From positions 1 through 52,423 of the forward strand of contig NIVC01001876.1 of the NCBI GenBank assembly GCA_002269645.1: a DNA stretch of 52,423 nt. Reading direction: 5' to 3'. A program made the translations under genes and the position numbers. The stretch comes from Macrostomum lignano (lineage: Eukaryota). This document shows positions 4,245 through 52,142 of this stretch, one piece after another. How positions within the stretch are numbered: the stretch's first letter is position 1; the number at the start of each line of letters is the position of its first letter. The notes beneath the pieces were generated by a model that saw nothing but the letters and a program-made list of their open reading frames with translations, made no database searches and was not told the DNA's origin.

Positions 4245-4351
4245 GGGGTGGTTTACAGTGGATGAGTTTCTCAATTTCGAAGATTCACTTGAACTTTCCA
4301 CTTCTCAATCATCCGATCTTAAAAAATTAAACACCCTCTAAATTATCTATA

Positions 4352-6339: not shown

Positions 6340-6491
6340 TCAATCAAACAGGAATCGCCGGCAGTTGGCTGAACCGCACAGGCATCGCATGCGCGCTAAG
6401 CCGCCACCATTGACGCTGCTGGCACCGCCGACACTGCTGCTCACCACACTGGCATTCTCGGCGGCGCTTTCTGACGCATCATCAGCGCCAA

Positions 6492-6522
<31 letters not shown>

Positions 6523-16611: not shown

Positions 16612-19600
16612 CTAATTGTAATAGCTACTCCGAGCTTGAGCACGACTGCGCAGTTGACCACTGTAGGCGGCCGAGCTACTCGACGCCAGACGAGTCGATG
16701 CACCGTTTGACCCAAGTGTTCTGGAGCTAGGACCGGCCTGGTGATAGCGATCTGCCTGCGACGCTGCTGTTGGTAGACTCGACGACTTGCTGTTGCTGTC
16801 GCTGCTGGTGCTGGCCCGTTGTAGGCCTTCAACTGCGTCGCGTAGTCTGCGAAGCTCTTCGTCTTTCTCTCGGAGTAAACGCTCGCGTTCCGCTAGAGTC
16901 TTGGTCATCCTGTAGACAGCGCAAAGAGGCGGATAGAAGACAGTTCCACTCGAATCCGCTAATATGGGATAATTGTGCGCCAAATATTGGCTTGAGACGT
17001 GTCGTGCGACTTACAATTCCAAGGCTACAGGCCTCTGTGAGTGCTTGCGTGTGTTCTCACGTACCGTATCTACGGCTAGGGGACAGCAAACTGTAGGCTT
17101 CGGGTTGAACTGTTGCCTTGATTTTCCCAAAAGTTCCCGCCCCCAGCTCTTATACATTTCCTTACAAAAGGGGTCGCAAATTCCGGCCCGGCGGGCCACA
17201 TGCAGCCCGCAAAGCCTCTCCATCCGGACCTCGAGTCCTTTGAAACTTCACAATACCAATCCGACCTGCTCAAGGTTTGAGTCTCTTCTCAGCTCTCCTC
17301 TCTTTAACCACCTCTTCTATTTTCTCTAATCTGTCCTCTGTCTTCTCCTCTCGCCTCTCCTCTTCCTTCTCTCTCCTCTCCTCTCTTTTCTCATATCCCT
17401 TCTCATCTCTACTCTTCTCTCCTCTCCCCTCCTCTCTCTTTTCCTCTGTTCTCTCCTCTCGTATCTTCTCATTTTCCTCGCTTCTCTTTTCTCCTATCTC
17501 TCTTCTCTCCTCTTTATTCCATTTCCTCTTTCCCCTCCTCTTGCCCGCAGTCATGCTCTAGGTTCTCTATCTGGCCCTTGAGGTAAAAAAAGATTGCCGA
17601 CTCCTGCCTTACAAGTTACTGACAAACTAAAAACCAGCAGGACTCTGCGCTTCTTGTAGGCCTTAAACAAATGTTATTACTGGACTACACAAGATTCAGG
17701 CAATGATCAAATACCGACTTGTTGTAAAACCTGCCTCCTAAAGATTTTCCAAGAAATATTGTTTCCCCGTCCTTCTACTTCAGTAGTCCTTGGACGGATG
17801 TTCGGCATAATGTCTTGATCCGTCGGCCTACCCACTTGTCATGGCGACGTCATTTCATGTACGTAGCTAGACGCGTCGTATTATTGTACGGGTTTGTATA
17901 AGACTTACGTAACAAGCGTTGCTTATGTTGGTGCCATGCACTCACCTCGACATTTGCCAGTCGCTCTGCCTCAGTCTGTTGAGCCGAATCTGTTCATAGA
18001 TCACCTCGTGCGTCTTGTCTTTAAAGTCTTCCATGTACATTCTGTTGAATGGATGTTCAAGTATACTTGGTGTTTGTTTTTTCAGGTTCAGTCATTTAGA
18101 TATTCACAATACTTCAGAACTACTGAAAATAGTTATTTTTAAAGGACCTAAAACTTTCTATCATCCCAATTACTTGACGCACTGCACTATTTTGGAGAGT
18201 CCACGGCTTAACCTCCAAATATACTCACATGAGAAGTTCGCGCAGTTTCAAAAAATCGGAGAACTCCGGATTGTCAATATCGACCACTCCCCAGGGATAT
18301 TCTCGCACCCTGGCCCATTGACCGTTGGCATTTTTCACCAGCTGATTGGCGCCAACAACAGCCAACGGCATGCAGCTTCTGAGGCTATCGTACTGATTCC
18401 TCAGGTAGACATCGTCGCCGTGTTGATCGGCTTGGTTGCCGAAGCATTCGTCAAATTCTGGGAGAGTGTACACCGAGATGCCGTGCCGGCTGAGATCCTG
18501 CAGAATCCAGGCTTTCAGGTTCGCCTTCTCGCTTGTCGTCAGAGTGTCGGCTTTGCCAATGACCGGAACAATATTAACCTTGCTGTGCAACGCTTTCAAG
18601 CACATCAGGTCTAACTGCTTCAAACCGCGACTAGACGGATTAATCAAATACAGCAGGGCGTGGACACGTCCGTCCTGCAGTTTGGACCTGTCAGTTCCCT
18701 GTTCCATTCGGTAAAAGTCGTCCAGCTGGCGTTCCACGTAGCTGAGCACTGGCTGCACGCAGCCGTTGCTATCCAGCTCGGTGGCGAATCCGGGCGTGTC
18801 AATCACAGTCAGCCGAACCGTAACTCCGCCTTCTTCCAGCTCGAAGAACCGTTCGCACAGTCTAGTTGTACTGGTGGCATCGCGCTGGCCTCTGACGTAT
18901 TGGCTGCCAAGATTTCGTGTACTCTCAACGTTGAACAAAGAGTCGATCAGGGTGGTCTTGCCGATGCCGCTCTCGCCGACTAGCATCAGCTTGAAGTCGA
19001 AACCGCGCCGAGCAGACTTTTTGCACAGCTGACGCGACAACGAACGGAGCTCGAGGTCGCGACCGCTGAATTCCATGTGACTGGAGGTCCGCTGCACAGG
19101 AGGAACCTGACTGACTGACCAGTCGTCTTCGAGTTGACCGTTCTCGCGAGGAACTGAAAATGTGAGATTGCTTTTCACATGAACAAAAAGTACATGTTGT
19201 TCTTTTGGGCAGTTTAATCTGGCAGAAACACAATTATTTTGCAGGGGCGCCAGCTGCAGAGGAGAGGCGCCAGCTACAGAGGGGAGGCGCCAGCTACAGA
19301 CGGGGCGCCAGCTACGAAACCGCAATATAATTCTTGATAGAGCCACAGAACTATCAAGGTCCCTGAGAATGCCAGCTACTTTAAGCTGGCTGCAACGGGC
19401 TGCTTGTAAGTGGTGAAGTTATCACTCCAGTCAAATTTAGTTAGTCTAATAATTATAAACCTATAACTCGAACTGAGTCAAGCTACGAGTTACATGCAGT
19501 TCGATCCTTAACTACCAGTCTACTTCGTAAACGTAAAAGCCCTAAGATAGTTCTAAGTCTACAAGAACAAACTAAACCAAATTCTTCTTACCGGCACTAC

Positions 19601-20685: not shown

Positions 20686-22264
20686 TACATACATACATAC
20701 ATGTACACCGCCGCAAAAGAAAGCAAAAGGAAAAGGGGGCAGCACGGGACGGAAGAGCAGAAAAAGGGGGAAAAGAAACGGAAATGTGAGAGCGTGGCGG
20801 CAGTGTCAGAGCACTCTCCTTCTGGCTTGCTCCCTGAAGGCAGCCGCAGCGTTGGTCTGGCCGATGACACCGGCGTCAGCCAGCAGGCAGTCCACGTACC
20901 GGCGCGTCCTGGCCTGCCCTCGGCGCCAGGGGCCCCGCAGCGTGAGCAGCAGGACGTCCTGCACCGGTTCAGGGCAGTAGGTTTCGGCGCGGATCACGTG
21001 GCCCGCCAGCTGCAGCCGCCGCCGCCGGATGGTCTCGCTGGGTGGTCGCAGGCCGGCTCGTCGGTAGAGGGCCGCGTTCGAGACCACCTCAGGGTAGGAG
21101 ATGCCGAAGGCCGCGCGCAGCAGGCTGGAGTGGGCCGCGTCCAGCCGCTTCTCCAGCGTCTCGGTCAGCGTCCACGTCTCGGCGTTGTAAGTCAGGACGG
21201 TCTCGACCACCGCCTGAAACAGCCGAGACCTCAGGCGATCTGGCAGCGCGGCGCTCTGCAGAACAACCCGGACTGAGCGGAAGGCCGCCCAAGCCAGGCC
21301 TCTGCGTCGCGCCAGGTCCTCCTGAACGCTGGGCACCAGACCGCCGAGGTACGTGAAGCGCGTGCAGCGGGGTAGAGGGGCCGCGTGACCGTCTGCGCCG
21401 CGGCAGGTGATATTGGCAGGCAGCTCCGCTGGCACCGTCAGGACCTCCGTCTTGTCGGTGTTAACAACCAGGCCGACCGTAGCCGCTATCGCCACCAGGC
21501 TGTCCAGCATCCGCTGGGCTCCATCCGCCGTGGAGGCCAGCAGCGCCAGGTCGTCGGCATAGCCCAGCAGCGACAGTCTCTTCTCTGGATGGCGGCTGCT
21601 CGTGCGCCTGCACAGCATGAAGCCGTCGGCGTCGGATGGAAGCGCAGTCCGCAGCACCCAGTCGAGGACCAGCACGAACAAGAAGGGCGCTAGCGTGTCG
21701 CCCTGCAGCACTCCAGATGTTGTACTGAATGGGTCCGACAGCCCGTCGGGCGTCACCACGGCGGCTTGAGTGTCCTGGTAGAGCGCCATGACTGCGCTGA
21801 CCAGGCGCTGGGGCACGTGGTAAGCCCGGAGCACCGGCACAAGGGCGCCGCGCGCCACCGAGTCGAACGCCTTTCTGAAGTCAACGAAGACACAGATCAG
21901 CGTCGCCTGGCGGGTGCGCGCCTCCTCGATTGTCCTCCTGAGGGCAAGGATCTGGGTCGCTGTGCCCCGGTGTGGCCGGAAGCCGTTCTGCTCGTGCCGC
22001 AGAAACGGGTCCAGCACCGGTTGCAGCCGCGTCAGCAGGATCTTGTTGAAGAGCTTCGCGGCGCAAGACATCAGCGAGATGCCCCTATGTTCTTCTTTCC
22101 GAGTTGTGCCGGGCTTCTTTGGGATGGGGATCATGTGGGCCGTCGTCCACTCAGTTGGGGCTGCACCCCCGTCAAGTACGCGGTTCATCACACCGGCGAC
22201 CGCACGGGCCACCGGCAGGACTCGCAGCGCCTCGACAGGGATCTCATCCGGGCCGGCCGCTGGT
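20686..22264 (-). mobile_element. 5'-truncated non-LTR retrotransposon (RTE-like) with an uninterrupted reverse transcriptase domain
   Basis: RT motifs RGISLMSC, QNGFRPHRGT, FVDFRKAFDSV, GVLQGDTLAPFLF, YADD and FTYLG. (TATG)n 3' tail at ~20686-20703. 11-bp TSD ccaaatgacca at 20675-20685 and 22265-22275. GC content is much higher than in the flanks. Confidence 0.93.
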
Positions 22265-23230
22265 CCAAATGACCAACAGTTGAGTTGAGAGCATATACCA
22301 GTTTGAATACTGTAGTAGGAGACTGCTGAAGTAGAAATTGTCTGACTCTCGAGAAACGACTCCTCTGATTCGATTTCATTAGCGGCCAGCATTCATTTGG
22401 CGCTTGTGTGCACAAAAAGTCATGAGTGCCTGCCTCCCAAGGCTCGGAGAGTGTACATGCCTGACGATTAGAAAGTCAGAGCCGCTGTACACCCTGCGTG
22501 AGCTGTGTGTATGAGTGCGCATTCAGGCTTGGCTCTAGAATTGCGGGACGATATCATCTGGGTGCTCACTAGCCCTTCAGCGAATAATTAAATATTTGCT
22601 ATATTTTAGTGGGTACATAAGGTAGAGTAGAGTTGACCTGGTAGATGATTAGTACAAGATCGTGTGAAACAATGTAAATACAAACTTCCTATACCTAATA
22701 GCCAATTATTAGCACTGATCATCTTTATTAATTTTTTGGCTGACTTCCGCAAGAATGCACAGTTGTCTTCCGTCTGAACTGCATCGGGGGCACTGGACAG
22801 GTCGCTAAGAAACTCATTCAGAGCTACTCTCGACACACTGCTCCATAACATTCTATTCAAATATAGAGACTGAATTGAAGCAAGTCTGTGCTTTGAAGAA
22901 CCTCTTCTACTTGATCTGATGCACCTCATCTTTTTTATATAATGGGCAAAGCAATTCAGCTTATAGAGAGTTTATTTTAGAATTGCCTAGGCCATGGACG
23001 ACTTAAGTTAAAGACGTCTGGATTGGACGGCAACTGAGAACAGTTGAAATTCACAGAAAGTTGTACAGCTTATTTGATGAATTTTTTTAACATTCTGGTT
23101 AACATTCAAGTTAACACACGCTACTGCACCGTGTGTTAACTTGTTTCGATTGAAAACTACGTACAATAATTTATATTGTGTATTCAACTTCTCACAGGTA
23201 TATTTATTCAACTGTTTATTAGAATTTTCA

Positions 23231-25599: not shown

Positions 25600-28200
<2,601 letters not shown>

Positions 28201-29380: not shown

Positions 29381-32300
29381 TTATTCAACCGTTCTAGCAA
29401 CCACATTTTTAGCTGTACTCTTCACAACGCTGGTGGTGTTGTTAGCCAGAACGTTGACTTCCACGCCGTTGAAGCACCAGTTGGTGAGATTCCAAGCTAG
29501 GCGAACGTTGACGTCAACTTCGTCGTGCGCGAGTGATTCGATTTTCTTTTGATAAGTTGGCGTATTGATGAAAGCGCTGATTGACTCGAAGCGGTACATC
29601 ATGAGCACGGTTCGTCTGAGGTCAGTGTAGGTCTGGTACTCGGTGGTGTGCTGCAGAAGCAAGTTGCTGAAGAAACTTGCCTGCGGCGAGTCGCTGCCCA
29701 CAGTGTTTATCAGGTCGCGAATTTTCGCGTACAAATCTTTGATGATCTCCACGGTTAGTGAGACGCGATGCCTGAGTACGAATTGGGTTTAACTTTATTA
29801 AGCGACGAATTACGAACTGTTATGACCTGATGCTTAAGGAATGTCATGATCTGATGCTCAAAGAATGTCATGATCTGATGCTTAAGGAATGTCATGATCT
29901 AACGCTTAAGGAATGTCATGATCTGATGCTTAAGGAATGTCATGATCTGACGCTTAAGGAATTTCATTATCTGATGCTTAAGGAATGTCATGATCTGATG
30001 CTTAAGGAATGTCATGATCTGATTCTTAAGGAATGTCATGATCTGATTCTTAAGGAATGCCATAATCTGATGCTTAAGGAATGTCATGATCTGATGCTTA
30101 AGGAATGTCATGATCTGATGCTTAAGGAATGTCATGATCTGATGCTTAAGGAATGTCATGATCTGATGCTTAAAGAATGCAATGACCTGGTGGTCATGTA
30201 ATAAGATGCTACGCGATAAATAAACAAAACTATGAGAAAAATGCAACCCCACCTGTCAACTCCAAAAGCCATGTATTGCAAGTCGGCCAGCACGCGTGCA
30301 ATGCCGTTATTAGACTTCCAAAAATTGGTTTTAAATTCGCGCAATTTCTGCATCATGCTGTTTCGTTCGATCGATTTAGTGATGTCCGACTGGTTGCTGA
30401 CCGTGTTGGACAGGTTGATGTTGTCAACGACTGAGCCGCGGCCTGCGGCGCCCGTCTGAGGGACAGTTTGATTGGTTGTGTGATTGCTTTGTAACAAACA
30501 AACAACCAAACTGGCAAACAACACAACCAGCAAACCAGCAAACAAACAAGATAACAACAACTAACCCACGCTAAAACCAACCTTGCTACTAGAGCCGCCA
30601 GTGCTTAGACATGAGTCCCAAGGCAAGTTGTTGGTTAGCAGGGCCACTAAGGTGTAGAAAGCGGACTCAAGGTCATGCACCGGGTGAGCCTGACCTCCCT
30701 TCATCCTGATGTGCGATGCAAATCTCAGGTGACCGTACAGCTCGCTATCCGAGCCGCTCTTGCGCATATTATTGGGATCTTTGGGATCGAACAGCGTGGC
30801 CACGTTGAAATTCGCAATGTAGAGAACATTGAAAGCGATGCTGCGACCGAAGTAGAGATTGTGCGGCTCAATGGCGTTGTGAGTTACGCCGAATCTGTGA
30901 ATCTGAGGCGGTATTTGGGGACGTAACAACAATTTTGATTATTTACATCTTGGTTGGGTTGTGAAAGGTAAGTATGCGAAGGAAAAATGGGACAGGATAA
31001 GGATGTGATCGGATTAGGATGTGACAGGATTTGGATGTGACAGGATTAGGATGTGACAAGATTAGGATGTGACAGAATAAGGATGGGATGGAATAAAAAT
31101 GTGAGAGGATAAGGATTTGACAGGTTCAGGATGTGAAAGGATAAGGATGTGACAGGATTAGGATGTGACAGAATAAAGATGTGACAGGATCAAGATGTGA
31201 CAGGATAAGAATGTAACAGAATATGGATGTGACAGAATAAGGATGTGACAAGATAAAGATGTGACAGAATAAGAATGTGACAGAATTAGGATGTGACAGG
31301 ATAAAGATGTGAGAGGATAAGAATGGGACGGAATAAAAATGTGAGAGAGGATAAGGATTTGGCAGGGTCAGGATGTGACAGGATAAGGATGTGACAGAAA
31401 AAGGATGTGACAGGATAAGGTTGTGACAGGATAAGGATGTGACAGGATAAGGATGTGACAGGATACGGCTATGACAGGATGAGGATGTGACAGGATAAGG
31501 ATGTGACAGGATAAGGATGTGACAGGATAAGGATGTGACAAGCTGAGGTTGTGACAGGATAAGGATGTGACAGGATAAGGATTTGACAGGATAAGGATGT
31601 GACAGGATAAGGATGTGACAGGATAAGGATGTGACAGGATAAGGATGTGACAGGATGAGGATGTGACAGGATGAGGATGTGACAGGATAAGGATGTGACA
31701 GGATAAGGATGTGACAGGATGAGGATAGTCATCAGTAAGTTGCAGTTCGTATTTAACCTGCAAACAGCGGCACAGCAGCTGATCAAAAATCTTCAAAGCG
31801 GTGTCCACATCGAACACATATCCGCGTCGTTTCCCGGACACCATGACTTCCGTGAGGTACTGCAGATTTGGGCCCAACTGCTCCATGCACAGGTAGGACA
31901 GAGTGCTCCGGCTCTCGGATTTCCACGGCACTAAATTGCCATAGACATCGTAGAATTTGTACTCGGCCAGATCGTAGTTAAAAGTCGGATTTGACACTTC
32001 GTCGTATTTAAACACAATAGGAATTCCTGTCATCTCGTCTAGTTCCATTGTTTCTCGCATGAAATTGTCCCACAGGTGCTTAATGATGAGATTCTCTCGG
32101 AATAGCAGCCTCATGTGGGGCTGCTGCATTGCCTCACTGTCGAGGGCTTCGATCTTCAGTATCACACAGAGGGCAACGTCCCAGGGCCGGCATTTAGCTA
32201 ACTGGTTGTTCGGCTTCTCAGCGGTTCGCGTGTACTGACTGATCTTCTTCTCGAACTCCGGGTGGGAAGCGAATTTGTAGGTCTCGAAATTGGCGATCTG

Positions 32301-33717: not shown

Positions 33718-34290
<573 letters not shown>

Positions 34291-34295
34291 TAGAT

Positions 34296-37002
<2,707 letters not shown>

Positions 37003-37571: not shown

Positions 37572-39150
37572 TGTACACTACACCATGGCTACACTACAAT
37601 ATATGGCACATGTACACTACACCATGGCTACACTACAATATATGGCACATGTACACTACACCATGGCTACACTACAATATATGGCACATGTACACTACAC
37701 CATGGCTACACTACATTGGCACATGTACACTACACCATAGCTACACTACAATATATGGCACATGTACACTACACCATGGCTACACTACAATATATGGCAC
37801 ATGTACACTACACCATGGCTACACTACATTGGCACATGTACACTACACCATAGCTACACTACAATGGCACATGTACACTACACAATGGCTACACTACAAT
37901 GGCACATGTACACTACACCATGGCTACACTACAATATATGGCACATGTACACTACACCATGGCTACACTACAATATATGGCACATGTACACTACACAATG
38001 GCTACACTACAATGGCACATGTACACTACACCATAGCTACACTACAATGGCACATGTACACTACACAATGGCTACACTACAATATATGGCACATGTACAC
38101 TACACCATGGCTACACTACATTGGCACATGTACACTACACCATAGCTACACTACAATGGCACATGTACACTACACCATAGCTACACTACAATGGCACATG
38201 TACACTACACAATGGCTACACTACAATGGCACATGTACACTACACCATAGCTACACTACAATGGCACATGTACACTACACAATGGCTACACTACAATGGC
38301 ACATGTACACTACACCATAGCTACACTACAATGGCACATGTACACTACACAATGGCTACACTACAATGGCACATGTACACTACACCATAGCTACACTACA
38401 ATGGCACATGTACACTACACAATGGCTACACTACAATGGCACATGTACACTACACCATGGCTACACTACATTGGCACATGTACACTACACCATAGCTACA
38501 CTACAATGGCACATGTACACTACACAATGGCTACACTACAATGGCACATGTACACTACACCATAGCTACACTACAATGGCACATGTACACTACACAATGG
38601 CTACACTACAATGGCACATGTACACTACACCATAGCTACACTACAATGGCACATGTACACTACACAATGGCTACACTACAATGGCACATGTACACTACAC
38701 CATGGCTACACTACATTGGCACATGTACACTACACCATAGCTACACTACAATGGCACATGTACACTACACAATGGCTACACTACATTGGCACATGTACAC
38801 TACACAATGGCTACACTACAATGGCACATGTACACTACACAATGGCTACACTACATTGGCACATGTACACTACACCATAGCTACACTACATTGGCACATG
38901 TACACTACACCATAGCTACACTACAATGGCACATGTACTCTACACCATGGCTACACAACATTGGCACATGTACACTACACCATGGCTATACTACAATGGC
39001 ACATGTACTCTACACCATGGCTACACTACGTTGGCACATGTACACTACACCATGGCTATACTACAGAGGTACATGTACACTACACCATGGCTATACTACA
39101 TTGGCACATGTACTCTACACCATGGCTATACTACAGAGGTACATGTGCTG
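37572..39150. repeat. 39/35-bp minisatellite (tgtacactacaccatggctacactacaat[atat]ggcaca)n, ~1.6 kb
   Basis: Directly visible. It explains all ORFs from 37508 to 39172. Confidence 0.97.
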
Positions 39151-41055: not shown

Positions 41056-44000
41056 ATGGCTACTGCTCACTCTGCTGCCCATGAGCAGGGCAGTGAGGAT
41101 TCAGGCAGATCAGTCTCAGACCAGCCAACAGACTCAGCCGACAGGCACGCAACGTTTGACGGATTTGACCCGACCGAGTGGCCTGACATACTGATGATGA
41201 CAGAAGAGGATGATCCAGACTCTGATGACGATGTGGATGATGATAAGCTGCCGGACACGAAGCCTCTGGATCACAAATTTATGGGAAATCTGCTGGCGTT
41301 TGCAATTGAGGGACAGTTTAAACAAGCGATTGAATTTGTTGGAGGCGTGCCCGATCGACAGCTTCAACTGCAGCGAGACAAGCACCAGAGAACTGCCGCT
41401 CACTATGCCGGAATGAGTCCTGAAGGAGCAGAACTGCTCAAGAAATTAGTACAGAGATTGGGTACTTCCTGTCTGAGGCATGAGGACTGCAACTCGGTAG
41501 CTCCACTTCACTATGCTGCTCAGAACTATTCACTGCAGCAGTTTAGTGATCTGTTTCTAGGTGCGGAACAGGAGTTGCGGAGCTCAAATTATCGGAATAA
41601 AGTGGGAGACACGCTGGCCCACTTTGCTGCTAGAAATACTAGCGATGAAAAATTCATCAAATCGGTGCTCCACGGCAACAAGTCCGATCGGTTGCTATGG
41701 CAAAACAACAGAGGCAGCACGGTGCTTCATGAGGCAGTTGAGCACTGCAGTGCCGAAACTGTAAAGTATCTCCTTAGCCAGGGGATAAATCACTTCATTC
41801 CACTGAGCCTGAGAGATGAGAGCAATGACCATCAACAAGATGAAGAAGACGAAACAAGTGCGAGCGCAAACAAAAGGGCACGAAAATGGAAGGCACGGCA
41901 GGGGGCCATCGAGAAAATGAAAAATCTGAAAGACTCCGACGGAAACACGCTGGCCCACTGCGCCTCTAGGAACCGGAATCCGAGCTGCGATAAGGGCGCA
42001 GTGTTCCTGGAAGTGGAACAGCTGTTTGGCCAAGAATGTCTTAACTGGAGGAACTCAATGAATCAGACAGTGCTGCAGGCAGTCATCGAGTACAGCCCAG
42101 ACAGCACGGCTGAACAGATGGTAGAGGAATTCGCGAAATACAATATAGATCAGCTTTTTACGCACACCGATAAGTATAAGAACAGTTACCTGCACTTTGC
42201 CGCGATGTACAAAAAAGTACAAACATTCGGCAAGATATTGGAGCTGATGCTTAAAGCTCGTGAAAATGATGAATGCATCAAACAAATTAAAGACAAAAGC
42301 AATGTCGATGGCAAAACCGTTTTTTTCCTTGCTGCCAGTAGCAAAGATGAACTATTTCAGATTCTGAAGGAGAAACTTCCCCTCTTTGATTTGGGGAGAG
42401 TCCTTGGTGAGCGCGACAGCAGAAGCAGAAACATGCTTTTCTACGCCTGCATGAGCTGGAATTTCTTCTTTTTTAATGTTGAATTAGAGAAACCTGATGC
42501 TTTCACAGAAGCCGATACCGATGGAAACAGTCTTTTGCACGCCCTGTTTTTGAATCCCGAAACCGATGAGAAACATTCCTCCGACAACTTTTTTCAAGCT
42601 CTAAACTTCTTAGCTGAAAAAATGACTGGTAGCATTAAGCGGGAAAATAATATGGGAAAAAACTTTCTTCACTGCTCCCAGGTAAAAGAAGAAATTCTTA
42701 TTGAAATATTAAATGATGCAAAAAACATAACTGGGAAGAAAAACTGAAAGAAGTTTTTCTCAGCAAGGACGGCGTTCACGTAGTTCACGAGTTCGCTTGC
42801 AGGTACAACCTGAGGGCACTGATGACACCCCTTTCTAAGATTGCTGGAGTGAAGAAAGCCGAACTGCGGAGCAAGAAAGTCGAGAGGGGTCCCTTTAAGG
42901 GTGCAACCTGCCTGCACTTCGCCTGCCGAGCAGGTCACCAGGCCAACATTGTTTACTTACAGAATAAGAGCCTCAGCATCTACGCCAGAGACGGCGACGG
43001 GCACACTTGCGTAGATTATGCTCGCAACGCTGACCAGCTTAAAAGGCTGGTGGAGGTGGTGGAAACGAAGTTGAAGAATCAGGAAGGTCAGGAACCGCCA
43101 ATTAAATTTCTCCGCCTTCTGGATCCGGCTCAAGCAGCCTTGAAACTACCTGACCGAGTCGCCGCCATGCAGCACATTAGTAAGATTGTCGATCAACCGG
43201 TGATAGATGACGTAGAACGAGGCCAGTCACAATTTAAAAAAAAGCACAGACAGGCCAGGCCAACCCTTCGACTGACGTAGCAAGCAAGCCTTCGATTGAA
43301 GTCTCCGTATTCGAGGCTGTCTGGAAGGACGGCTCGACAATGGCGCTTCGAAGTGCACTTAAGCTGGACCCAGTAAGTTCAGATACTAAAACAAAGTTCA
43401 TTCGGTATTGGGTAAAGAAGCATCCTGGCGATAAATGCATTGAGGAAAACGAAGAAGAGATGCGAATAGTTGACCTTGCGCTTAGACGCGACAAGCTCGA
43501 TCTTCTTCCCGACCTCATTCTGACAAGGCAATTCGAGCTGATTCCCAGCTGCATTCTGCTGATCATTCAGCTGAAAGAAAAAAAGGCCAAAACTGATGAG
43601 AGCCATGACCAGCTAAAGCGCCTCAAGAGCAAAGTCGTCAGCATTGCTGTAAACACTCTTGACGAACTATACTTGAATGCGGACGGTGAAGAGAGGCAGC
43701 TTTTATTCAATTACATTAGAGGTGACGTCGGAGGACCAAAGTTTAGCATTGCCGACGATGAAAGCAGCAGAGCGCTCGCATGCTGCGGCGACGAGTCACA
43801 GCAGACTCAGCGGCACACTATTTTAGAACTGGTGGAAATTGCTGAATGCGAGGATCTGTACGCTACGGACTGCATCTACAAGCTGGCTGAAGAAGAGTGG
43901 AAAAACTCAAAGATCTGTGGAAGTCCAAAGATTCACTTTGTACTTAGCGTAGCTATCTACGTAGTATTCATGTTTTACTTTGCCTGGTTCATAACCGACT

Positions 44001-45937
44001 TTAGGAGTACATTCGATTGGTTGGGTAGTGACATAGCTTTGACAGCATTCGCGCTGCTGTTTGTCGTGCTCGAATTGTTCAAATTATTCTCGCTTCCGCT
44101 AAGAAGAATCTGCTGTTGCAACAGCAGAATGAGCAAGTGCTCGATGCACTGGAGGAATGTCTACAACGTGTTCGACTTCATAGCACTGCTGCTTCTGTGG
44201 CTCGGCATTGTCTGGAAATGGGTCATCTTCGGAAAGCCTGATGACGACACTGCCTACGCGTGCCAGTCTGTTCTCAGCACGTCGTTTCTCTTTTTTGGAT
44301 TTCGGTCTGTTGCCTTTCTAAGCTTGTATAAAAGGATCGGGCACGTCATCGTCATACTGATGAATTTAATCGTCAAAGATTTGCTACCCTTCTTAGCTAT
44401 CATTGCCATTGTTTTCCTGTCTTTCGGAGTGTTCTTTTTCAATTTGCTGTTCCCGTCAATCACTACGAACTCGACCGAAACTCAGAAACCGTTTTACTGG
44501 TGGCGAGTCATGCTGCAGATTTTTACCATGCCGTTTGACCTGCTTTTTACCAACTACGATCGCTTCGAGTTCGACACTCCTAGAATTGACTTACCCCAGG
44601 AAGTCGGTTTTGTGACAAACGCTATCGGACTGTCCTGGTTTCGCAATCTCACGATGTTTGTCTTCCTCCTGCTGGTGAACATTGTGATGGTGAACCTTCT
44701 TATCGCTCTGTTTAGTCTCCGGGTGAGCACACTTCACAGCAAGGCAACCGGGATCTGGAGACAAGGCTATTTTGAGCTGATTCGAGCGTATCAGAGACGA
44801 GCGGAACTGTGTCGGTGCTGCTTCGGAAGAAGTGCCTCGATTGATCCAGACGACAAACGAGACGTAAGTTTGATTTGATTGAGCTTGACCTGGGTTTGAG
44901 TGGATTTGATGGTTTTTTCATAAAATTAAATACAATTTCAATTTCAGCTCCCACTTTACTGCTATTAGTTTTCTTCTCTTGCCTTGCAGGTTAAGGAATA
45001 CATGGGAAAAAAATATCACAATTCATACCTCCTTTACCTGCGTTACCAAGCTCAACAACTGCGTAAACTTCGCCCGAGGCTGTCTAAAGAATTGGAAAAA
45101 CATCGAACGGACTTCGAAAAGCTGAAAGCACACTTCGAGAACAACATCACACAGGCAAGCTCTGAGATCAGCGACGATCTGGCGCGATTACAGCGCAAGT
45201 TGAATGACTTTGAGCACTCTCAGAATCTTAGAATTTTAGAGTTGGAACACTCACAGCAGAGGCGGCAGGTAACAGGAGTGAGACGTGCTAACCAACAGCA
45301 GAGACAGCTGGTAACAGGAGTGAGACGTGCTGACCAACAACAGAGCCAGCAGGGAACTGCAGGAGTGAGACGTGCTGACCAACAACAGAGCCAGCAGAGA
45401 ACTGCAGGGGTGAGCAGTGCTCACCAACAACAGAGCCAGCAGAGAACTGCAGGAGTGAGCAGTGCTGACCAACAACAGAGCCAGCAGAGAACTGCAGGAG
45501 TGAGACGTGCTGACCAACAACAGAGCCAGCAGAGAACTGCAGGGGTGAGCAGTGCTCACCAACAACAGAGCCAGCAGAGAACTGCAGGAGTGAGCAGTGC
45601 TCACCAACAACAGAGCCAGCAGAGAACTGCAGGAGTGAGCAGTGCTGACCAACAACAGAGCCAGCAGAGAACTGCAGGAGTGAGACGTGCTGACCAACAA
45701 CAGAGCCAGCAGAGAACTGCAGGAGTGAGCAGTGCTGACCAACAACAGAGCAAGCAGGGAACTGCAAGAGTGAGACGTGCTGACCAACAACAGAGCCAGC
45801 AGAGAACTGCAGGGGTGAGCAGTGCTCACCAACAACAGAGGCACCTGGTACCAAGAGTGAGCAGTGCTCACCAACAACAGAGGAGGCAGCAGGGACCAGA
45901 AGCCAGACGTACTGGCAAGCGGGCATGTAGGTCGTAG
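41056..45937 (+). CDS. Ankyrin-repeat TRP-family cation channel with a TRPM-like 6TM domain; two -1 frameshifts, one intron
   Basis: Ankyrin motifs (RTAAHYA, VAPLHYAA, GDTLAHFAA, GSTVLHEAV, NSYLHFAA, GATCLHFAC), then S1-S6 (PKIHFVLSVAIYVVF, FRSVAFLSLYKRIGHVIV, KDLLPFLAIIAIVFLSFGV, NIVMVNLLIALFS, IWRQGYFELI). ORFs 41056-42747, 42822-43280 and 43340-44878 join if one A is added to the runs at 42720-42725 and 43236-43243. Intron 44864-44989 (gtaagt...ttgcag, phase 0); last exon 44990-45937 encodes a coiled coil and a 15-aa repeat. Confidence 0.85.
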
Positions 45938-47064: not shown

Positions 47065-47429
47065 GTGTAGAAGTTTATTATACTCTTAGAAAGAAACGGC
47101 TGTGAAGGCGCTGTGGACGAATATTTGATCGAGTTTTCGTGCACGCTAACGTATATTTGTATTTTTGTTTGTAGACACGTATGGTTAGTAACTGATGCTT
47201 ATACTCGCAAGCAGACAGGTCAACGAGGTCAGGCATTTAATGCTACGGCTTCGGTGGCGATGACATTGATGGAAATAATTATGAATGTGCCGGTCGGAAA
47301 CATGGCAACAGATTTATAGGAGTGTCACCTGTAGTGCGTATTTCAGCTTGGCCGTGTTTTTTGAAGGCCATCGTTAGTGGGATTAGCGGCGTTATAGAGG
47401 GGGCGTCATAAGTGGGAATATTAGCGGCT

Positions 47430-47715
47430 TTAGCACCAGGGGCTTAGCAACAGGGCTTTAGCACCACAAGGGCTTTAGCACAGAGGGCTTTAGCACCAGG
47501 GGATTTAGCACCACCAGGGCCTTAGCACCACCAGGGCTTTAGCACCATCAGAGCTTTAGCACCAGGGGATTCAGCACCACAAGGGCTTTAGCACCACCAG
47601 GGATTTAGCACCAGGGGATTTAGCACCACCAGGGCTTTAGCACCACCAGGGCTTTAGCACCACCAGGGCTTTAGCACCAGGGGCTTTAGCACCACCAGGG
47701 CTTTAGCACCAGGGG
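47430..47715. repeat. 14-17 bp minisatellite (agggctttagcaccacc)n
   Basis: Directly visible. Confidence 0.93.
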
Positions 47716-49009
47716 ATTAAATTTAGATAAGTGGATCCATTATATCCGAACCGCGAGCACTTCACCGTCATGGACGCGTTCAAAGCAAGGAAATTTTTTG
47801 GTTAAATACTCGTACGAGTTAAAGAAGATGCTCAAAAGGTCTTCCGTGGACAACAAAGATGATCAAGAGGCTTTGCTATTCCATCGGTTCATCTGCGGCC
47901 TCTTTGAGCTCATAGGAAGTCACACTAGAATAATAGAGCAAGTTTCACTAAGTGCAAGCTGATTTTAGCTTCAAACTACGAATAGACACAAATTAGGCAC
48001 AAATCTCATGAAGATATTTAATTTGATTTTTTATTTCATTCATTCGTTCAATTTAACTTTCAAACAGTTCGTTCGTACAAGCGTGCAGAGTAGTTGGAAA
48101 TAAAATGGTCAGATTTGAATAGTCCAATTTCAAGAACTTCTCAACCAATTTGATTAAATTACTAAATCTATAAACTTATAGTTTTACTTTCAGTAGTGTA
48201 TTACAAAGTAGCAAAGTGTTGAAAAATAATATGTAAAAAAACAAGAATAACCGTGTCAGTCTGAATGGATTAACTTTAACTCTTACCGGGGTTTTTAGGC
48301 AGTGCAAGGAAAGTTGGAAACAAAAATTTTACATGGCTAATTTTTAGTTCTTTAAAAAAACCTCTCCTAGTTTTTATAACCCCCCCGCCCTAAAATTATG
48401 GTCATTTAAACGGGTGAATAAAATTTAAAGTTAGACACAAATGGTATAAAATTACTCAACTAACACGAGGAGGGTGTCCAAAAAGTCGTCCACAAAATTT
48501 GAGCTGCTAAAGCTTATTTTTGATATTGAAGCCCTTTGTATGTTTTTGGAAGTAAATTTATGATTAAAACACTGATAACTACTTTTTGGACAACCCAAAT
48601 ATCACTAACTAAAAGCTAATGTGCTTTTTCGAATTAGGTGTACTTTATTTAGAATAATTTGTACTTTATGAAACTACAGAGAACATATCCGCCTCTCACC
48701 AAAATAAGAAGTCTATTAGAAAGAAAGGCATAAAGAACTGCAAAAACTACTGCGGATTCAGGAGAAAAAATTCTTTATTAAAGCAGCCAAACTTTAGCCA
48801 ATATTTTAGCTAAATACCAAAAAATTAAATGACAAATAACAAGTAGAATATTGGACAAATAAATTCGACAGGAGTTATTTACAGGCCACAGGAAACCCAA
48901 AAGCCAAAAGCTATTTTTTGTTGCAAAAACTCAGTCGTCAGTATGGCAATGTTTTTTCCTGATCAAACAGACAGTCAATGTTTTCATATCATTTATTGTC
49001 TTGGTCATT

Positions 49010-49480
49010 TGGTTAGATTAGCAATCCATTCTATTTCTACCTATGATAGTTAATTGGATAGATTAGCAATCCATTCTCTTCTACCTATGATAGCTAATTG
49101 GATAGATTAGCAATCCATTCTATTACTACCTATGATAGTTAATTGGATAGATTAGCAATCCATTCTATAACTACTTATGATAGCTATTTGGATAGATTAG
49201 CAATCCATTCTATAACTACTTATGATAGCTATTTAGATAGATTAGCAATCCATTATATTACTACCTATGATAGCTAATTGGATAGATTAGCAATCCATTC
49301 TATTACTACTTATGATAGTTAATTGGATAGATTAGCAATCCATTCTATTACTACTTTTGATAGTTAATTGGATAGATTAGCAATCCATTCTATTACTACC
49401 TATGATAGCTAATTGGATAGATTAGCAATCCATTAAATTCCTACTTATCATACCAGATAAGATAGATTAGCAATCCATTC
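49010..49480. repeat. 45-bp minisatellite immediately 3' of the DNAAF2 stop codon
   Basis: Unit gatagattagcaatccattctattactacctatgatagttaattg, about 10 copies. Confidence 0.93.
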
Positions 49481-49513: not shown

Positions 49514-52142
49514 TCAATCGTCGTCCAGCTCAAAGATGACGCTACTAGTCAGCTGAGAAGCGCTACCGACAGAGACTGTCGACGACTGACCGACAGCTTT
49601 AGGCGTCGCTTTGGCCGCGGGCGGCTTCTGAGACGGCTGTGCCGGCGGCGGCGGCGACAGGGGAGACGCGGCGGCGGAAGCGACAACAGCGGCGGCCGCG
49701 GCAACAGTCTCAGCCTCCTCAGCTTCATCATTGTCGTCGACAATTCTGAAGTCTTCGCCGTTTTCGTCGCCGTCGTTATAAAATTCATCGTCATTAGCGT
49801 AGCAGCCTTCAGAGCTTCGTCGGACCCGAGCAACGCGCCAACCGGAAGTAGAACCGGAACCGGAACCAGAACCGGAAGCAGAACCGGAACCAGAACCGGA
49901 AGCAGACGAAGGTTCCACAATCGTAGGCGCCGTAGTGTCGCTGTTGTGCCGACGTCGACGAGTTTCGCGCTGTTTTTGGCGCTTCTTGCGATTGCGCAAC
50001 GTCTGATGAAAAGCGCTGATGGTGGCCGTTGTGCTGTAGTGGGAGAATAGGGAAGCGGTGAGATGGGAATCTGTTTGACTCAACAGTTCTAAGACTCTAA
50101 ATAGACACGTAGCTATTGAGTTGGATGGATTGCTAATCTACAGACACATAACTAGCACATTTTTATTAGATTAGAGGCAGGGGGGTTGTGTGCACCCTGG
50201 CGCACTTTAAGCGACATAGGCACACAACCGGCGAGAGGCATTACTGCCCATTCCGCCGACTCCCCTGAGCAGGCACACAAGCGCGCGGATACGTCGCAGG
50301 CACACACTCACACAGGAGTGTACAGCGGCCCTAACTTTATTTATCGTTAGGAATGTACACTTCACTGCGCCTTGGGGGGTTGGCTCTCAAGGCCGTTAAT
50401 TGCACGAGCAGAGCCAAGCCGAGATTCCAATTTAGCCCCAAATTAATGTGACTGCACTTGGAATCGAGCCTGGGTCGCTGGCACACCAGAGCAGCTGCGC
50501 TACCGCTGGGCTACGGCCCCCTTATAACTAGCACATACCTGTAATTAGCCGACTCCACGTGACTTGAGAAAGACACAGATCTATTGAGCAACACATTCTG
50601 CTGCTGCTGACCCTGACTGCTAGACAAAGAGCTGGACAAATCGTCAGACGAAGACAAGGATGGACTTCTTGTAATCTTGAGAATTCCTTGCACACGAGAT
50701 TGAGACTGCTGATCTTGCTGTTGCTTCTGCTGCTGAACAGGCGGAGGCGCCTGTTGCTGGGCAGTCACTGCCACCGGTTTGTCTCGAACATCTTCGCCAA
50801 CACCGTCTAGCCTGACTGTGAGTCGGTCTCCGCTCAGTTCGGTGACCACAAGAGATGATGGAGCAGCCGATGTTGATGCAGCAGAAGCTGCAGATGGCGC
50901 AGCAGAGTACTGAGCCAGACAGCCAGCTAAGCTCTTATTCATATTTGGCAGTTGAATAACTGTTTTAGCAATTGACTCATCGCTGGCCGATGTGGGTGAT
51001 GGTTTGGCCTGCAGGATCAGCTGATCGAGCCATTGGTCTTTGCGAGTCTTAACAAATCTGACAACAATATTGTCTTGATTGGCCTGTTAAGAATGATGAT
51101 TTATTTATAATATGATTAGGCTTAGATTAAAATATTCATAAAAAATTAACACAACTGAAAACAGTACATTAAAGTACATACTGTACATTATAGAATATAC
51201 AGTAGATTAAAGTATAGTTACAATACTTTTCAGTACAAAAAATACATTACAGTACATAGCAATACATTGTAGTAAATTACATTACATAAAAATACATCAC
51301 AATAAATCATAGTACTTAACAATACATTACAGTAAATTACAGTACATAGCAATACATCACAGTAATTACAGTACAAGCAGCACATTACAGTGCATTACAG
51401 TACATACAGTATGTTGCATTACATCCCAGGTACATATGGATAAGAATATTAGATTAGGAGGATCAAGACAGAGATTCGAGATCCAATTAGAATTAAGGAT
51501 AAAGAAGACAACATACTACACACAGGTTAACATTCTCCTGTACCTGCACAAAGTCCACAGTGAAATCCGATCGCATCACAGCCAGGCTGTAGTCGCTACG
51601 CCAGCCTCCGGAACCGACGCTGGCAAAGCTGACTGCCCAACAGCAGCCGCCGCTTGACACCTCGGCCTCTTTAATAGACTCCGGATCAACATTCTTCACG
51701 TCAATCAGCATTGTCAGATGACTGTCAGTCTGACTACAGCGAATAGCCGTGCTAGGTAGCAATTGACCAACTCGAAATTCTTCTTTCATACTAGTACTAC
51801 TACTATCAGTAGCATTCTCAGTAGTATTGGTAGCATCGGTAGGTTTAGCATCAACAGACGAAGCGGTCTCGGAGGAGTCTGGAAGCTCTTCAATAAGCGG
51901 AGCCGGGTCTGGCATAGCAACAGCGGACGAAACAGACAGCTCAACTGGTCTCTGTTGAGCAATACACGGCAGGATTAGAGTAAGCCGATGAGATTTGCGA
52001 TCGAATTTTGCCGATCCATTGTCCTCGGTTACAGGGTAGGGCAAGCGGAGCTGCAGGTTGTAAGCGGCTGAAGACTGCTGACTGGTGACGCGTAAATCAC
52101 GGTTGTCAACGTCAACATCGATAGCCTGGGCCGTGGTGACGC
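49514..52142 (-). CDS. DNAAF2: Dynein axonemal assembly factor 2 (kintoun), 3' exons; the gene continues beyond the right edge
   Basis: Exons 52142-51544 (IDVDV...YNLQLRLPYPVTEDNGSAKFDRKSHRLTLILP, PIH1/CS-type, then a second CS-like CSQTDSHLTMLIDVKNVDPES), 51083-50539 (NQDNIVVRFVK...W, GILK, RSVSFSSHV) and 50033-49514 (ending FELDDD). GT-AG junctions with phases 0 and 2. Confidence 0.8.
50161..50523 (-). mobile_element. tRNA-derived SINE in the last DNAAF2 intron
   Basis: Minus-strand head GGGGCCGTAGCCCAGCGGTAGCGC...GGCTCGATTCC carries Pol III A and B boxes (50449-50520). Short ctaatctaataaaa tail. 13-bp TSD ataactagcacat at 50148-50160 and 50524-50536. Confidence 0.82.
51150..51425. repeat. 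AT-rich degenerate repeat (acagtacatt-like), intronic
   Basis: Directly visible. Confidence 0.75.

What the first reader, a model, noticed from the sequence alone, without database searches (positions are those of the whole stretch)
41056..45937. Chimeric-looking TRP channel: long ankyrin array on a TRPM-type membrane domain
Seen: ~750 aa with many divergent ankyrin repeats precede a 6TM domain. By eye the TM motifs resemble TRPM more than TRPA or TRPV: S1 PKIHFVLSVAIYVVFMFYFAWFITDF, S5 KDLLPFLAIIAIVFLSFGV, S6 NIVMVNLLIALFS, TRP helix IWRQGYFELIRAY. Established: canonical TRPM channels have MHR/SLOG N-termini and no ankyrin repeats, which typify TRPA, TRPN, TRPV and TRPC. The first ~3.8 kb of CDS is intronless, compatible with retroposition or recent shuffling. 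It may represent a lineage-specific sensory channel subfamily.
Basis: partly seen in the sequence, partly recalled or inferred. Interest (0 to 1): 0.72.

Follow-up and report, generated by a model that had tools for sequence, protein, structure and literature searches.

The report
Flatworm ankyrin-bearing TRPM-like channel gene
This is a real gene for an ion channel that joins about 14 ankyrin repeats to a TRPM-type membrane domain, but the design is already known from flatworms (the schistosome meclonazepam target TRPM_MCLZ), so it is a new family member rather than a new kind of channel.

Summary
The gene is real. It has two exons on the + strand (41056-44863 and 44990-45937) separated by a 126-nt intron, and encodes about 1,585 aa.

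- **Layout:** about 14 ankyrin repeats, an MHR4-like helical linker, a TRPM-type S1-S6 domain with a TRP helix, C-terminal helices, and a tail encoded by a 45-bp minisatellite.
- **TRPM affinity of the membrane part:** the family profile scores E 6e-33 against solved TRPMs, and the top 50 Foldseek hits are all TRPM. A TRPA1-like channel gets no hit.
- **Missing TRPM feature:** no SLOG/MHR1-2 domain is present.
- **Prior description:** parasitic-flatworm TRPM_MCLZ (Smp_333650) has ankyrin repeats in place of SLOG and few exons, and is called 'TRPM-like' in print.
- **Placement:** the gene belongs to a large, very divergent Macrostomum lignano expansion. Its closest relative is Mlig005733g3, at 66% aa and 81% nt identity with colinear flanks. 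It groups only weakly with TRPM_MCLZ (48-55% bootstrap) and is a paralogue, not an orthologue.
exon 1 is not one ORF. Two 1-nt deficits in A-runs (42720-42725 and 43236-43243) split it into three frames. The M. lignano orthologue is intact, and dN/dS stays low downstream (0.29-0.36). Assembly error is more likely than a young pseudogene.
- **Recent shuffling:** not supported.

The parts
41056..44863 (+). Exon 1: ATG through the TRP helix. As assembled it is read in three frames.
   Evidence: ORFs. tblastn with P0188 gives three overlapping HSPs in three frames. The M. lignano orthologue has one uninterrupted 1,295-codon exon here.
41368..43065 (+). Ankyrin-repeat array, about 14 divergent repeats (aa ~105-670).
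   Evidence: Pfam Ank_2 E 1.2e-20, Ank_3, Ank and Ank_4. PDB hits are generic ankyrin proteins.
42720..42725 (+). Frame break 1: an A6 run one base short relative to the orthologue (frame 1 to frame 0).
   Evidence: The frame-0 reading NWEEKLKEVFLSK matches P0188 exactly.
43236..43243 (+). Frame break 2: an A8 run one base short relative to the orthologue (frame 0 to frame 2).
   Evidence: The frame-2 reading ...QANPSTD... matches P0188.
43454..43912 (+). Helical linker homologous to TRPM MHR4/pre-S1, with motifs LPDLILTRQFELIPSC (43505-) and HTILELVEIAECEDLYATDCIYKLAEEEWK (43814-43903).
   Evidence: hhalign gives family vs TRPM_MCLZ linker 95% (E 4e-8), MCLZ vs canonical TRPM 98% (E 1.2e-14), and family vs canonical only a weak E 5.5e-3. 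Foldseek alignments to TRPM4 span 613 columns, so they include this linker.
43925..44326 (+). S1-S4 voltage-sensor-like domain: S1 43925-44002, S2 44030-44092, S3 44150-44230 (N..D motif kept), S4 44255-44326.
   Evidence: AF2 helices, motif coordinates and alignments to TRPM structures.
44330..44725 (+). Pore domain: S4-S5 linker, S5 (44375-44452), pore helix with the atypical filter LLFTNYD (44540-44560), and S6 (44636-44725).
   Evidence: Canonical TRPMs have F/Y-G-E/Q at the filter position.
44753..44791 (+). TRP helix IWRQGYFELIRAY. The W is invariant across the aligned family, TRPM_MCLZ and TRPM sequences.
44864..44989 (+). Intron: 126 nt, GTAAGT...TTGCAG, phase 0.
   Evidence: The position is identical in the M. 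lignano orthologue.
44990..45937 (+). Exon 2: a conserved helical C-terminal region (YLLYLRYQAQQLRKLRPRLSKELEKHRTDFEKLKAH...) followed by a repeat-encoded tail. The TAG stop is at 45935-45937.
   Evidence: Alignments. The stop codon aligns with the M. lignano stop.
45273..45882 (+). 45-bp minisatellite, 13.7 copies, in frame, encoding (QQSQQRTAGVSSA[HD]Q)n. It is absent from the M. lignano orthologue.
   Evidence: TRF result and comparison with L002. All frames on both strands are open here, so openness alone does not show that it is coding.

Best explanation
The locus encodes one subunit of a flatworm 'TRPM-like' cation channel.

**Architecture.** The ancestral TRPM N-terminal SLOG/MHR1-2 module is replaced by about 14 ankyrin repeats. 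The rest of the TRPM chassis is kept: an MHR4-like linker, an S1-S4 voltage-sensor-like domain, the S5-pore-S6 region, the TRP helix and C-terminal helices.

**Placement.** It is the orthologue or close homeologue of Macrostomum lignano Mlig005733g3. It belongs to a large, fast-evolving Macrostomum expansion. That expansion is paralogous to the single-copy TRPM_MCLZ of parasitic flatworms.

**Inferred mechanism.** By analogy with TRPM structures and with the measured properties of Sm.TRPM_MCLZ, four subunits would form a non-selective cation pore. The pore would be gated through the S1-S4/TRP-helix cavity by a small ligand or Ca2+, and the cytoplasmic ankyrin solenoid would act as a regulatory or partner-binding platform. 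The function, the gating cue and the effect of the unusual LLFTNYD filter are inferred, not shown.

**Frame breaks.** The two breaks are most likely homopolymer-length errors in the assembly (about 75%) rather than real lesions.
For: **TRPM-type membrane core**
- phmmer against solved structures gives TRPM2/4/5 at 6e-11 to 1e-9, against NOMPC at 9e-4.
- The family profile's top 60 PDB hits are all TRPM, the best at 6e-33. The alignment runs from pre-S1 through S6, the TRP helix, the 'RP.LPPP' segment and the C-terminal helices.
- The AF2 model (pLDDT 77.5) gives a Foldseek top 50 that is entirely TRPM. The best is TRPM4 8rcr_A, at E 3.7e-11 and TMq 0.61 over 613 columns.
- The family HMM finds nothing in a TRPA1-like channel even at E<=10.

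**N-terminal domains**
- Ankyrin Pfam hits are present, and there is no LSDAT_euk, TRPM2 or TRPM_tetra hit. A TRPM6 control shows all three.
- Linker homology runs through TRPM_MCLZ to canonical MHR3/4. Another M. lignano ankyrin-bearing group scores above Pfam's threshold for the TRPM2-like domain.

**Known kind**
- P0199 carries all eight residues published for Sm.TRPM_MCLZ and is 1,380 aa long (PMC10788528, PMC11731825).
- The literature describes ankyrin repeats in place of SLOG, 3 exons, and a 'TRPM-like' clade next to the TRPMs (PMC11731825, PMC12861061).
- In the NJ tree all ankyrin-bearing sequences form one clade. The window gene is sister to P0188 (80-82%) inside the Macrostomum family (78-84%).

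**Intact gene**
- The protein is colinear with intact P0188 across both breaks, and the intron and stop positions match.
- There are no other stop codons in about 1,585 codons.
- dN/dS is 0.44 overall, and 0.29-0.36 downstream of the breaks.
Against: - As assembled, the reading frame is broken twice, so the fused protein is not encoded literally. No reads or cDNA were available to decide.
- Grouping with TRPM_MCLZ has only 48-55% NJ bootstrap support, and rooting is unresolved.
- The pore filter lacks the TRPM F/Y-G-E/Q motif.
- This gene and P0188 have lost the post-TRP 'PPP' segment that the rest of the family keeps, so conduction properties cannot be assumed.
- MCLZ pocket residues are not conserved (H827 aligns with S, H831 with Y).
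- The source species is not identified, and no expression evidence exists.
Confidence: 0.78

Rival explanations
1. Young pseudogene. The two single-base deletions are real, and the copy was recently inactivated within a large, rapidly turning-over gene family.
For: - The gene has two frame breaks.
- The family is large and fast-evolving (dN/dS 0.44), a setting in which gene death is common.
- The C-terminus carries a 610-bp minisatellite expansion absent from the orthologue.
- No exact product is on record in any assembly.
Against: - Both lesions are 1-nt deficits inside A-runs, which is the signature of long-read homopolymer error.
- With dS 0.38 to the orthologue, even a modest period of neutral drift should have produced stop codons, yet none occurs in about 4.7 kb.
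- dN/dS downstream of the breaks (0.29-0.36) is lower than upstream (0.56).
- The minisatellite keeps the frame through to the conserved stop.
Confidence: 0.17
2. Programmed -1 ribosomal frameshifting joins the three frames.
For: Both breaks need a -1 shift, and both lie on in-phase slippery heptamers: A_AAA_AAC at 42719-42725 region and A_AAA_AAG at 43237-43244 region (read directly).
Against: - The joint chance of being in phase is about 1/3, because an A8G run fits any phase.
- The orthologue encodes the same protein in a single frame.
- Two successive low-efficiency shifts would give almost no full-length product.
- No stimulatory structure was sought or seen.
Confidence: 0.02
3. Two or three separate genes: a soluble ankyrin protein and an N-terminally truncated channel starting at M 43340.
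For: The ORFs 41056-42747, 42822-43280 and 43340-44878 each begin with ATG.
Against: - Conservation with P0188 runs straight through the ORF junctions in the alternative frames.
- There is no intergenic space.
- The orthologue and many paralogues are single polypeptides.
Confidence: 0.02
4. A TRPA/TRPN/TRPV/TRPC-type channel whose TM domain only looks TRPM-like, or a recent locus-specific exon-shuffling chimera or retrocopy.
For: Ankyrin repeats typify those families. The ankyrin region hits NOMPC and TRPA1 among others.
Against: - The ankyrin hits are generic, with designed ankyrin proteins scoring best.
- The TM, linker and C-terminal parts match only TRPM.
- The layout is shared across flatworm paralogues and orthologues, with a conserved intron.
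Confidence: 0.01

Closest known systems
Sm.TRPM_MCLZ (Smp_333650) and its trematode and cestode orthologues: the flatworm 'TRPM-like' clade, target of meclonazepam
   Same: - It has N-terminal ankyrin repeats instead of SLOG/MHR1-2, an MHR4-like linker, a TRPM-type S1-S6 with TRP helix, and C-terminal helices.
- Both are intron-poor (3 exons against 2).
- Both are restricted to flatworms.
- They fall in the same clade in the NJ tree (PMC10788528, PMC11731825, PMC12861061).
   Different: - TM-core identity is only about 20%.
- The relationship is paralogous, and clade support is weak (48-55%).
- The published meclonazepam-pocket histidines are not conserved.
- The pore sequences differ (LLFTNYD against SIFEVS..EEE).
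- The array is longer (about 14 against about 5-6 detected repeats).
- TRPM_MCLZ is the only ankyrin-bearing TRPM paralogue reported in S. mansoni (PMC11731825), whereas this family has at least 18 lineages below 50% identity in M. lignano.
Macrostomum lignano BOX15_Mlig005733g3 (PAA; P0188), an uncharacterised 'ion transport domain-containing protein'
   Same: - It shares 66% aa and 81% nt identity.
- The flanks are colinear.
- The intron position and stop codon are the same.
- The domain order is the same.
   Different: - It is intact in one frame.
- It lacks the 45-bp minisatellite expansion.
- dS of 0.38 implies a different species or an old duplicate.
Canonical TRPM channels (TRPM2/3/4/5/8; nvTRPM2)
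   Same: - The fold and sequence signature match from MHR4 through S6.
- The S3 N..D motif, the S4-S5 'GP' motif, the S6 'N(I/L)LL.NLLIA.F' motif and the TRP-helix W are all present.
   Different: - It has no SLOG/MHR1-2 and no Pfam TRPM2 or TRPM_tetra hit.
- It has bona fide ankyrin repeats.
- The filter glycine is replaced.
- The 'PPP' segment is lost in this gene.
TRPA1 / TRPN (NOMPC)
   Same: A long N-terminal ankyrin array precedes a 6TM TRP core.
   Different: - TM similarity is negligible. NOMPC scores E 9e-4, and a TRPA1-like channel gets no hit with the family HMM.
- The ankyrin similarity is generic.

Membership tests
Canonical TRPM | TRPM-type S1-S6 and TRP-helix sequence and fold | tested here: met
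   PDB profile search: top 60 hits all TRPM, best E 6e-33. Foldseek: top 50 all TRPM.
Canonical TRPM | N-terminal SLOG / MHR1-2 (Pfam LSDAT_euk) | tested here: not met
   No hit at E<=1 in the window ORFs, P0188, P0199 or P0061. The TRPM6 control scores 3e-106.
Canonical TRPM | MHR3/4 helical region before S1 (Pfam TRPM2-like domain) | tested here: inconclusive
   No Pfam hit. Direct hhalign is weak (E 5.5e-3), but the link is strong through TRPM_MCLZ (4e-8, then 1.2e-14). Foldseek alignments include the linker.
Canonical TRPM | Absence of ankyrin repeats | tested here: not met
   Ank_2 E 1.2e-20 and about 14 repeats. TRPM and TRPS are stated to lack ankyrin repeats (PMC7306681).
Canonical TRPM | Selectivity filter F/Y-G-E/Q | tested here: not met
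   LLFTNYD lies at the aligned position. The family consensus is F-T-x-F/Y.
Canonical TRPM | Post-TRP 'RP.LPPP' segment and C-terminal coiled coil | tested here: inconclusive
   The family consensus keeps 'P.P.SF', and the profile aligns to the drTRPM2 C-terminal helices. This gene and P0188 lack the PPP segment. There is no TRPM_tetra Pfam hit.
Flatworm ankyrin-bearing 'TRPM-like' channels (TRPM_MCLZ clade) | Ankyrin repeats in place of SLOG on a TRPM-like core | tested here: met
   The definition comes from PMC11731825 and PMC12861061.
Flatworm ankyrin-bearing 'TRPM-like' channels (TRPM_MCLZ clade) | Clusters with TRPM_MCLZ orthologues apart from SLOG-bearing TRPMs | tested here: inconclusive
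   The clade is recovered in both NJ trees, but with only 55% and 48% bootstrap support. Linker hhalign to MCLZ gives 95%.
Flatworm ankyrin-bearing 'TRPM-like' channels (TRPM_MCLZ clade) | Flatworm origin and intron-poor gene | tested here: met
   All named relatives are from M. lignano or Neodermata. This gene has 2 exons, against 3 in S. mansoni (PMC11731825).
TRPM_MCLZ orthologue (strict) | Published VSLD pocket residues (H827, H831, Y864, E868, R943, H946, Y1117) and activation by meclonazepam | tested here: not met
   P0199 has all of them. In the window protein H827 aligns with S and H831 with Y, and the S2 alignment is uncertain. Pharmacology cannot be tested here.
TRPA / TRPN / TRPV / TRPC | TM domain of that family | tested here: not met
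   NOMPC is the best non-TRPM hit, at E 9e-4 against 6e-11 for TRPM. A TRPA1-like channel (P0248) gets no hit with the family HMM.

The most novel reading that the evidence does not exclude
The Macrostomum family is a distinct, unnamed TRPM-like subfamily. It has at least 18 deeply diverged lineages, a glycine-less 'F-T-N-F/Y-D' pore and a long ankyrin solenoid. On this reading it would serve free-living flatworms as an expanded sensory (chemo- or thermo-) receptor repertoire. Alternatively or additionally, the ankyrin-bearing clade as a whole could descend from a pre-SLOG, ankyrin-retaining ancestor of TRPM/TRPS rather than from a secondary domain swap. That would revise the view that ankyrin repeats were lost before the TRPM-TRPS split (PMC7306681).
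Probability: 0.12. Interest if true: 0.65.

Novelty: new member of a known kind. Interest (0 to 1): 0.33.

Why it matters
- **Free-living relatives of a drug target.** The ankyrin-for-SLOG TRPM-like design is known experimentally only from the single-copy meclonazepam target of parasitic flatworms. This locus shows that it has diversified massively in a free-living, genetically tractable flatworm genus.
- **Experimental use.** The Macrostomum paralogues give natural sequence variation in the VSLD pocket, pore and ankyrin array. That variation could help explain how TRPM_MCLZ-type channels gate.
- **Annotation.** Several M. lignano gene models of this family (P0002, P0013, P0189, P0190) skip conserved segments. 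This window's copy needs homopolymer polishing before any gene call.
- **Limits.** It does not overturn TRP classification.

Tried and rejected
- **Small introns at the frame breaks.** GT at 42682 with AG at 42763 gives the wrong phase. The only phase-compatible pairing would be a 56-nt intron that removes conserved residues. Alignment to P0188 shows colinear coding sequence instead.
- **First AF2 run.** A 6-sequence alignment gave pLDDT 54 and the model was discarded. The second run, with 31 sequences, was used.
- **Supplementary FASTA.** The files for the two TRPM_MCLZ papers, which would have supplied outgroups and Smp_333650, are not held. TRPM_MCLZ orthologues were identified through the eight published residue positions instead.
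- **Source record.** Exact-product look-ups for three window ORFs found nothing, so the species is unidentified.
- **Other homopolymer breaks in the window.** A scan found only the two in this gene. The septin ORF ends at a normal splice donor. The assembly's error rate therefore could not be measured independently.
- **Origin of the ankyrin array.** Ankyrin region against PDB gave only generic matches.
- **Elysia ankyrin protein with a precomputed TRPM2-domain hit.** This is a sub-threshold cross-match lying on its ankyrin repeats, not a channel relative.
- **Rooting with a TRPA1-like outgroup.** Basal nodes have 0-12% support, so whether the clade is nested in or sister to the TRPMs cannot be decided from my tree.


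Full report
**What is in the sequence.**
- On the + strand, four long open stretches follow one another: 41056-42744 (frame 1), 42717-43277 (frame 0), 43238-44875 (frame 2) and 44969-45934 (frame 2).
- The last two are joined by a canonical intron: GTAAGT at 44864 and TTGCAG ending at 44989, 126 nt, phase 0.
- The first three are not separated by introns. They overlap, and each frame change falls in an A-run: A6 at 42720-42725 and A8 at 43236-43243. These are the only two such events in the 52-kb window.
- Reading across them with X at each break gives a conceptual protein of 1,584 aa.

**Observation check.**
- The quoted S1, S5, S6 and TRP-helix strings are all present verbatim.
- Pfam finds ankyrin families on the first ORF (Ank_2 E 1.2e-20) and, below Pfam's cut-offs, on the second. 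It finds nothing on the membrane part, which shows how divergent that part is.
- A repeat HMM together with xxLHxA periodicity gives about 14 repeats between aa ~105 and ~670.
- S1 begins near aa 954, so about 290 aa of helical linker separate the array from the membrane domain.

**Classification of the membrane part.**
- A single-sequence search of all solved structures returns TRPM2/4/5 at E 6e-11 to 1e-9. The first non-TRPM hit, NOMPC, is at 9e-4.
- A six-sequence family profile (alignment A2) puts TRPMs in all 60 top places, the best being zebrafish TRPM2 at 6e-33. The alignment runs from pre-S1 through S6, the TRP helix, the 'RP.LPPP' segment and into the C-terminal helices.
- A model built with 31 aligned sequences (pLDDT 77.5, pTM 0.68) matches only TRPM structures in the top 50 Foldseek hits. 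An N-truncated human TRPM4 (8rcr_A) aligns over 613 columns with TMq 0.61, so the match includes the linker.
- The family HMM finds nothing in a TRPA1-like channel even at E<=10.

**What replaces the TRPM N-terminus.**
- No SLOG (LSDAT_euk), TRPM2-like or TRPM_tetra Pfam domain is detected in the window ORFs or in the intact relatives. A fish TRPM6 control shows all three.
- Profile-profile comparison links the ~150 aa before S1 to the corresponding region of TRPM_MCLZ orthologues (95%, E 4e-8). That region is in turn linked to canonical TRPM MHR3/4 (98%, E 1.2e-14). The direct comparison is weak (E 5.5e-3) but in the same register.
- Another M. lignano ankyrin-bearing group passes Pfam's threshold for the TRPM2-like domain (34.5 bits).
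- Only MHR1/2 has therefore been exchanged for ankyrin repeats.
- The ankyrin array itself resembles designed consensus ankyrins, NOMPC, TRPA1, espin and gankyrin about equally, so its source cannot be assigned.

**Relatives.**
- All word-index hits are M. lignano proteins.
- The best is BOX15_Mlig005733g3 (P0188, 1,400 aa), at 66% identity over 100% of the pre-S1 query.
- Its locus (L002) is 81% identical at the DNA level over 4.1 kb and has colinear flanking matches.
- Its first exon is 1,295 uninterrupted codons. Its single intron lies at the same codon, and its TAG stop aligns with the window's stop.
- An exhaustive profile search of 1.84 billion representatives gives 1,231 hits. A block of very strong hits comes first, and every one I looked up is from M. 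lignano. They amount to at least 18 lineages below 50% mutual identity, most carrying ankyrin repeats. Weaker ankyrin-bearing groups follow, then ankyrin-free TRPM-like proteins of tunicates, molluscs and hemichordates.

**This kind is already known.**
- The literature describes Sm.TRPM_MCLZ (Smp_333650). It is a Ca2+-permeant channel with a linear current-voltage relation, activated by meclonazepam.
- It 'lacks the NH2-terminal MHR1/2 or SLOG domain' and instead has ankyrin-like repeats. [quoted passage not shown]
- Among the weaker hits, P0199 (Schistosoma guineensis, 1,380 aa) carries H827, H831, Y864, E868, R943, H946, Y1038 and Y1117. That is every residue published for Sm.TRPM_MCLZ.
- P0200 has Y940 and P0197 has Y944, as published for the Asian-clade species.
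- P0050, P0061 and P0193-P0205 are therefore TRPM_MCLZ orthologues, and they show ankyrin plus Ion_trans domains without SLOG.

**Phylogeny.**
- I built a neighbour-joining tree of the S1-to-post-TRP core: 305 trimmed columns, 148 sequences, 200 bootstraps, with a TRPA1-like outgroup.
- It places every ankyrin-bearing sequence in one clade (55%).
- That clade splits into two parts. One is the window family (84%) plus an M. lignano sister group (92%). The other is the remaining M. lignano groups (90%) plus TRPM_MCLZ and allies (80%).
- The window gene is sister to P0188 (80%).
- Pruning fragments gives 48% for the all-ankyrin clade, 78% for the family and 100% for TRPM_MCLZ.
- Basal nodes are unsupported, so I cannot say whether the clade is nested in or sister to the SLOG-bearing TRPMs. 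The published ML tree places it adjacent to them.
- The window gene is a paralogue of TRPM_MCLZ, not an orthologue. Core identity is about 20%, and the S1 pocket histidines are replaced.

**Peculiarities of this subfamily.**
- The S3 'N..D' motif, the S4-S5 'GP', the S6 'N(I/V)VM.NLLIALF' motif and the TRP-helix W are kept.
- The filter reads LLFTN(Y/F)D where TRPMs have F/Y-G-E/Q.
- The window gene and P0188 have lost the post-TRP proline segment that other family members retain.
- The C-terminus carries an in-frame 45-bp minisatellite (13.7 copies) between a conserved QQSQQ seed and the conserved stop. It is absent from M. lignano.

**Are the frame breaks real?**
- Against L002, each break is a 1-nt gap within what is an A-run in the window.
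- The restored reading reproduces the orthologue's residues on both sides: NWEEKLKEVFLSK and QANPSTD.
- Nei-Gojobori estimates give dS 0.38 and dN/dS 0.44 overall. The value is 0.56 before the first break and 0.29-0.36 in the three segments after it. No other stop occurs in about 1,585 codons.
- This fits homopolymer under-calling in a long-read assembly, which the fully resolved kilobase-scale satellites in the window also suggest. Otherwise the inactivation must be very recent. I put the split at about 75:17.
- Both sites happen to be in-phase -1 slippery heptamers (A_AAA_AAC and A_AAA_AAG). Chance alone gives about 1/3, and the orthologue needs no shift, so I give programmed frameshifting about 2%.

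**Mechanism.**
- Shown: homology and fold of a TRPM-like subunit bearing an ankyrin array.
- Inferred from TRPM structures and from the measured behaviour of Sm.TRPM_MCLZ: tetrameric assembly, non-selective cation conduction, and gating through the S1-S4/TRP-helix cavity.
- Inferred more loosely: the ankyrin solenoid replaces SLOG as the cytoplasmic regulatory layer.
- A sensory role is suggested only by the size and rapid evolution of the family.

**Verdict.**
- The architecture call is right.
- 'Recent shuffling or retroposition at this locus' is not supported.
- The design has been described in flatworms since 2023.
- I rate it a new member of a known kind, of modest interest.

Noticed in passing
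window 42719-42725 and 43237-43244: Both frame breaks coincide with in-phase canonical -1 slippery heptamers (A_AAA_AAC and A_AAA_AAG). This is probably coincidence, because an A8G run fits any phase.
   Followed up: partly
window 45273-45882: An in-frame 45-bp minisatellite (13.7 copies, 91% matches) extends the C-terminus by about 200 aa of QQSQQRTAGVSSA(H/D)Q units. The M. lignano orthologue has a single seed copy. All six frames are open across the array.
   Followed up: yes
window 4351-5138, 11152-11929, 26874-27291, 30987-31726, 33718-36857, 37572-39146, 47426-47711, 49009-49480: The window is packed with tandem arrays, for example a 273-bp unit x7 at 99%, a 35-bp unit x44, and (ATCT)n of 1.2 kb. 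The 30-bp array at 11152-11929 also occurs next to the orthologous gene in M. lignano (L002 5348-5454).
   Followed up: partly
window 20806-22392 (-): A reverse-transcriptase ORF (RVT_1, E 4.6e-31) lies in a GC-rich (58%) island. It is probably a retrotransposon insertion.
   Followed up: partly
window 3045-4301 (-), 6340-7008 (-), 18225-19346 (-), 51493-52044 (-): Neighbouring host genes are a tRNA m1G methyltransferase-like ORF, a SET-domain ORF, a septin whose ORF ends at a normal GTGAGT donor, and a weak (below Pfam's cut-off) PIH1 CS-like fragment. Long exons are common here, so an intron-poor gene is not unusual in this genome.
   Followed up: partly
P0002, P0013, P0189, P0190 (M. lignano UniProt models): Several deposited M. 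lignano gene models of this family skip conserved segments, including the stretch around the window's first frame break and parts of S1-S4. This suggests mis-prediction in that assembly.
   Followed up: partly
P0275 (Elysia crispata RRG08_036964): This pure ankyrin protein gives a sub-threshold Pfam TRPM2-like-domain match lying on its ankyrin repeats. That fits the view that the TRPM MHR3 region is ankyrin-like.
   Followed up: partly
P0042, P0047, P0048 (Logan / MetaClust, unnamed): These ankyrin-bearing TRPM-like sequences branch next to the TRPM_MCLZ orthologues (80-96% bootstrap), but their source organism could not be named. They might extend the clade to other flatworm orders.
   Followed up: no
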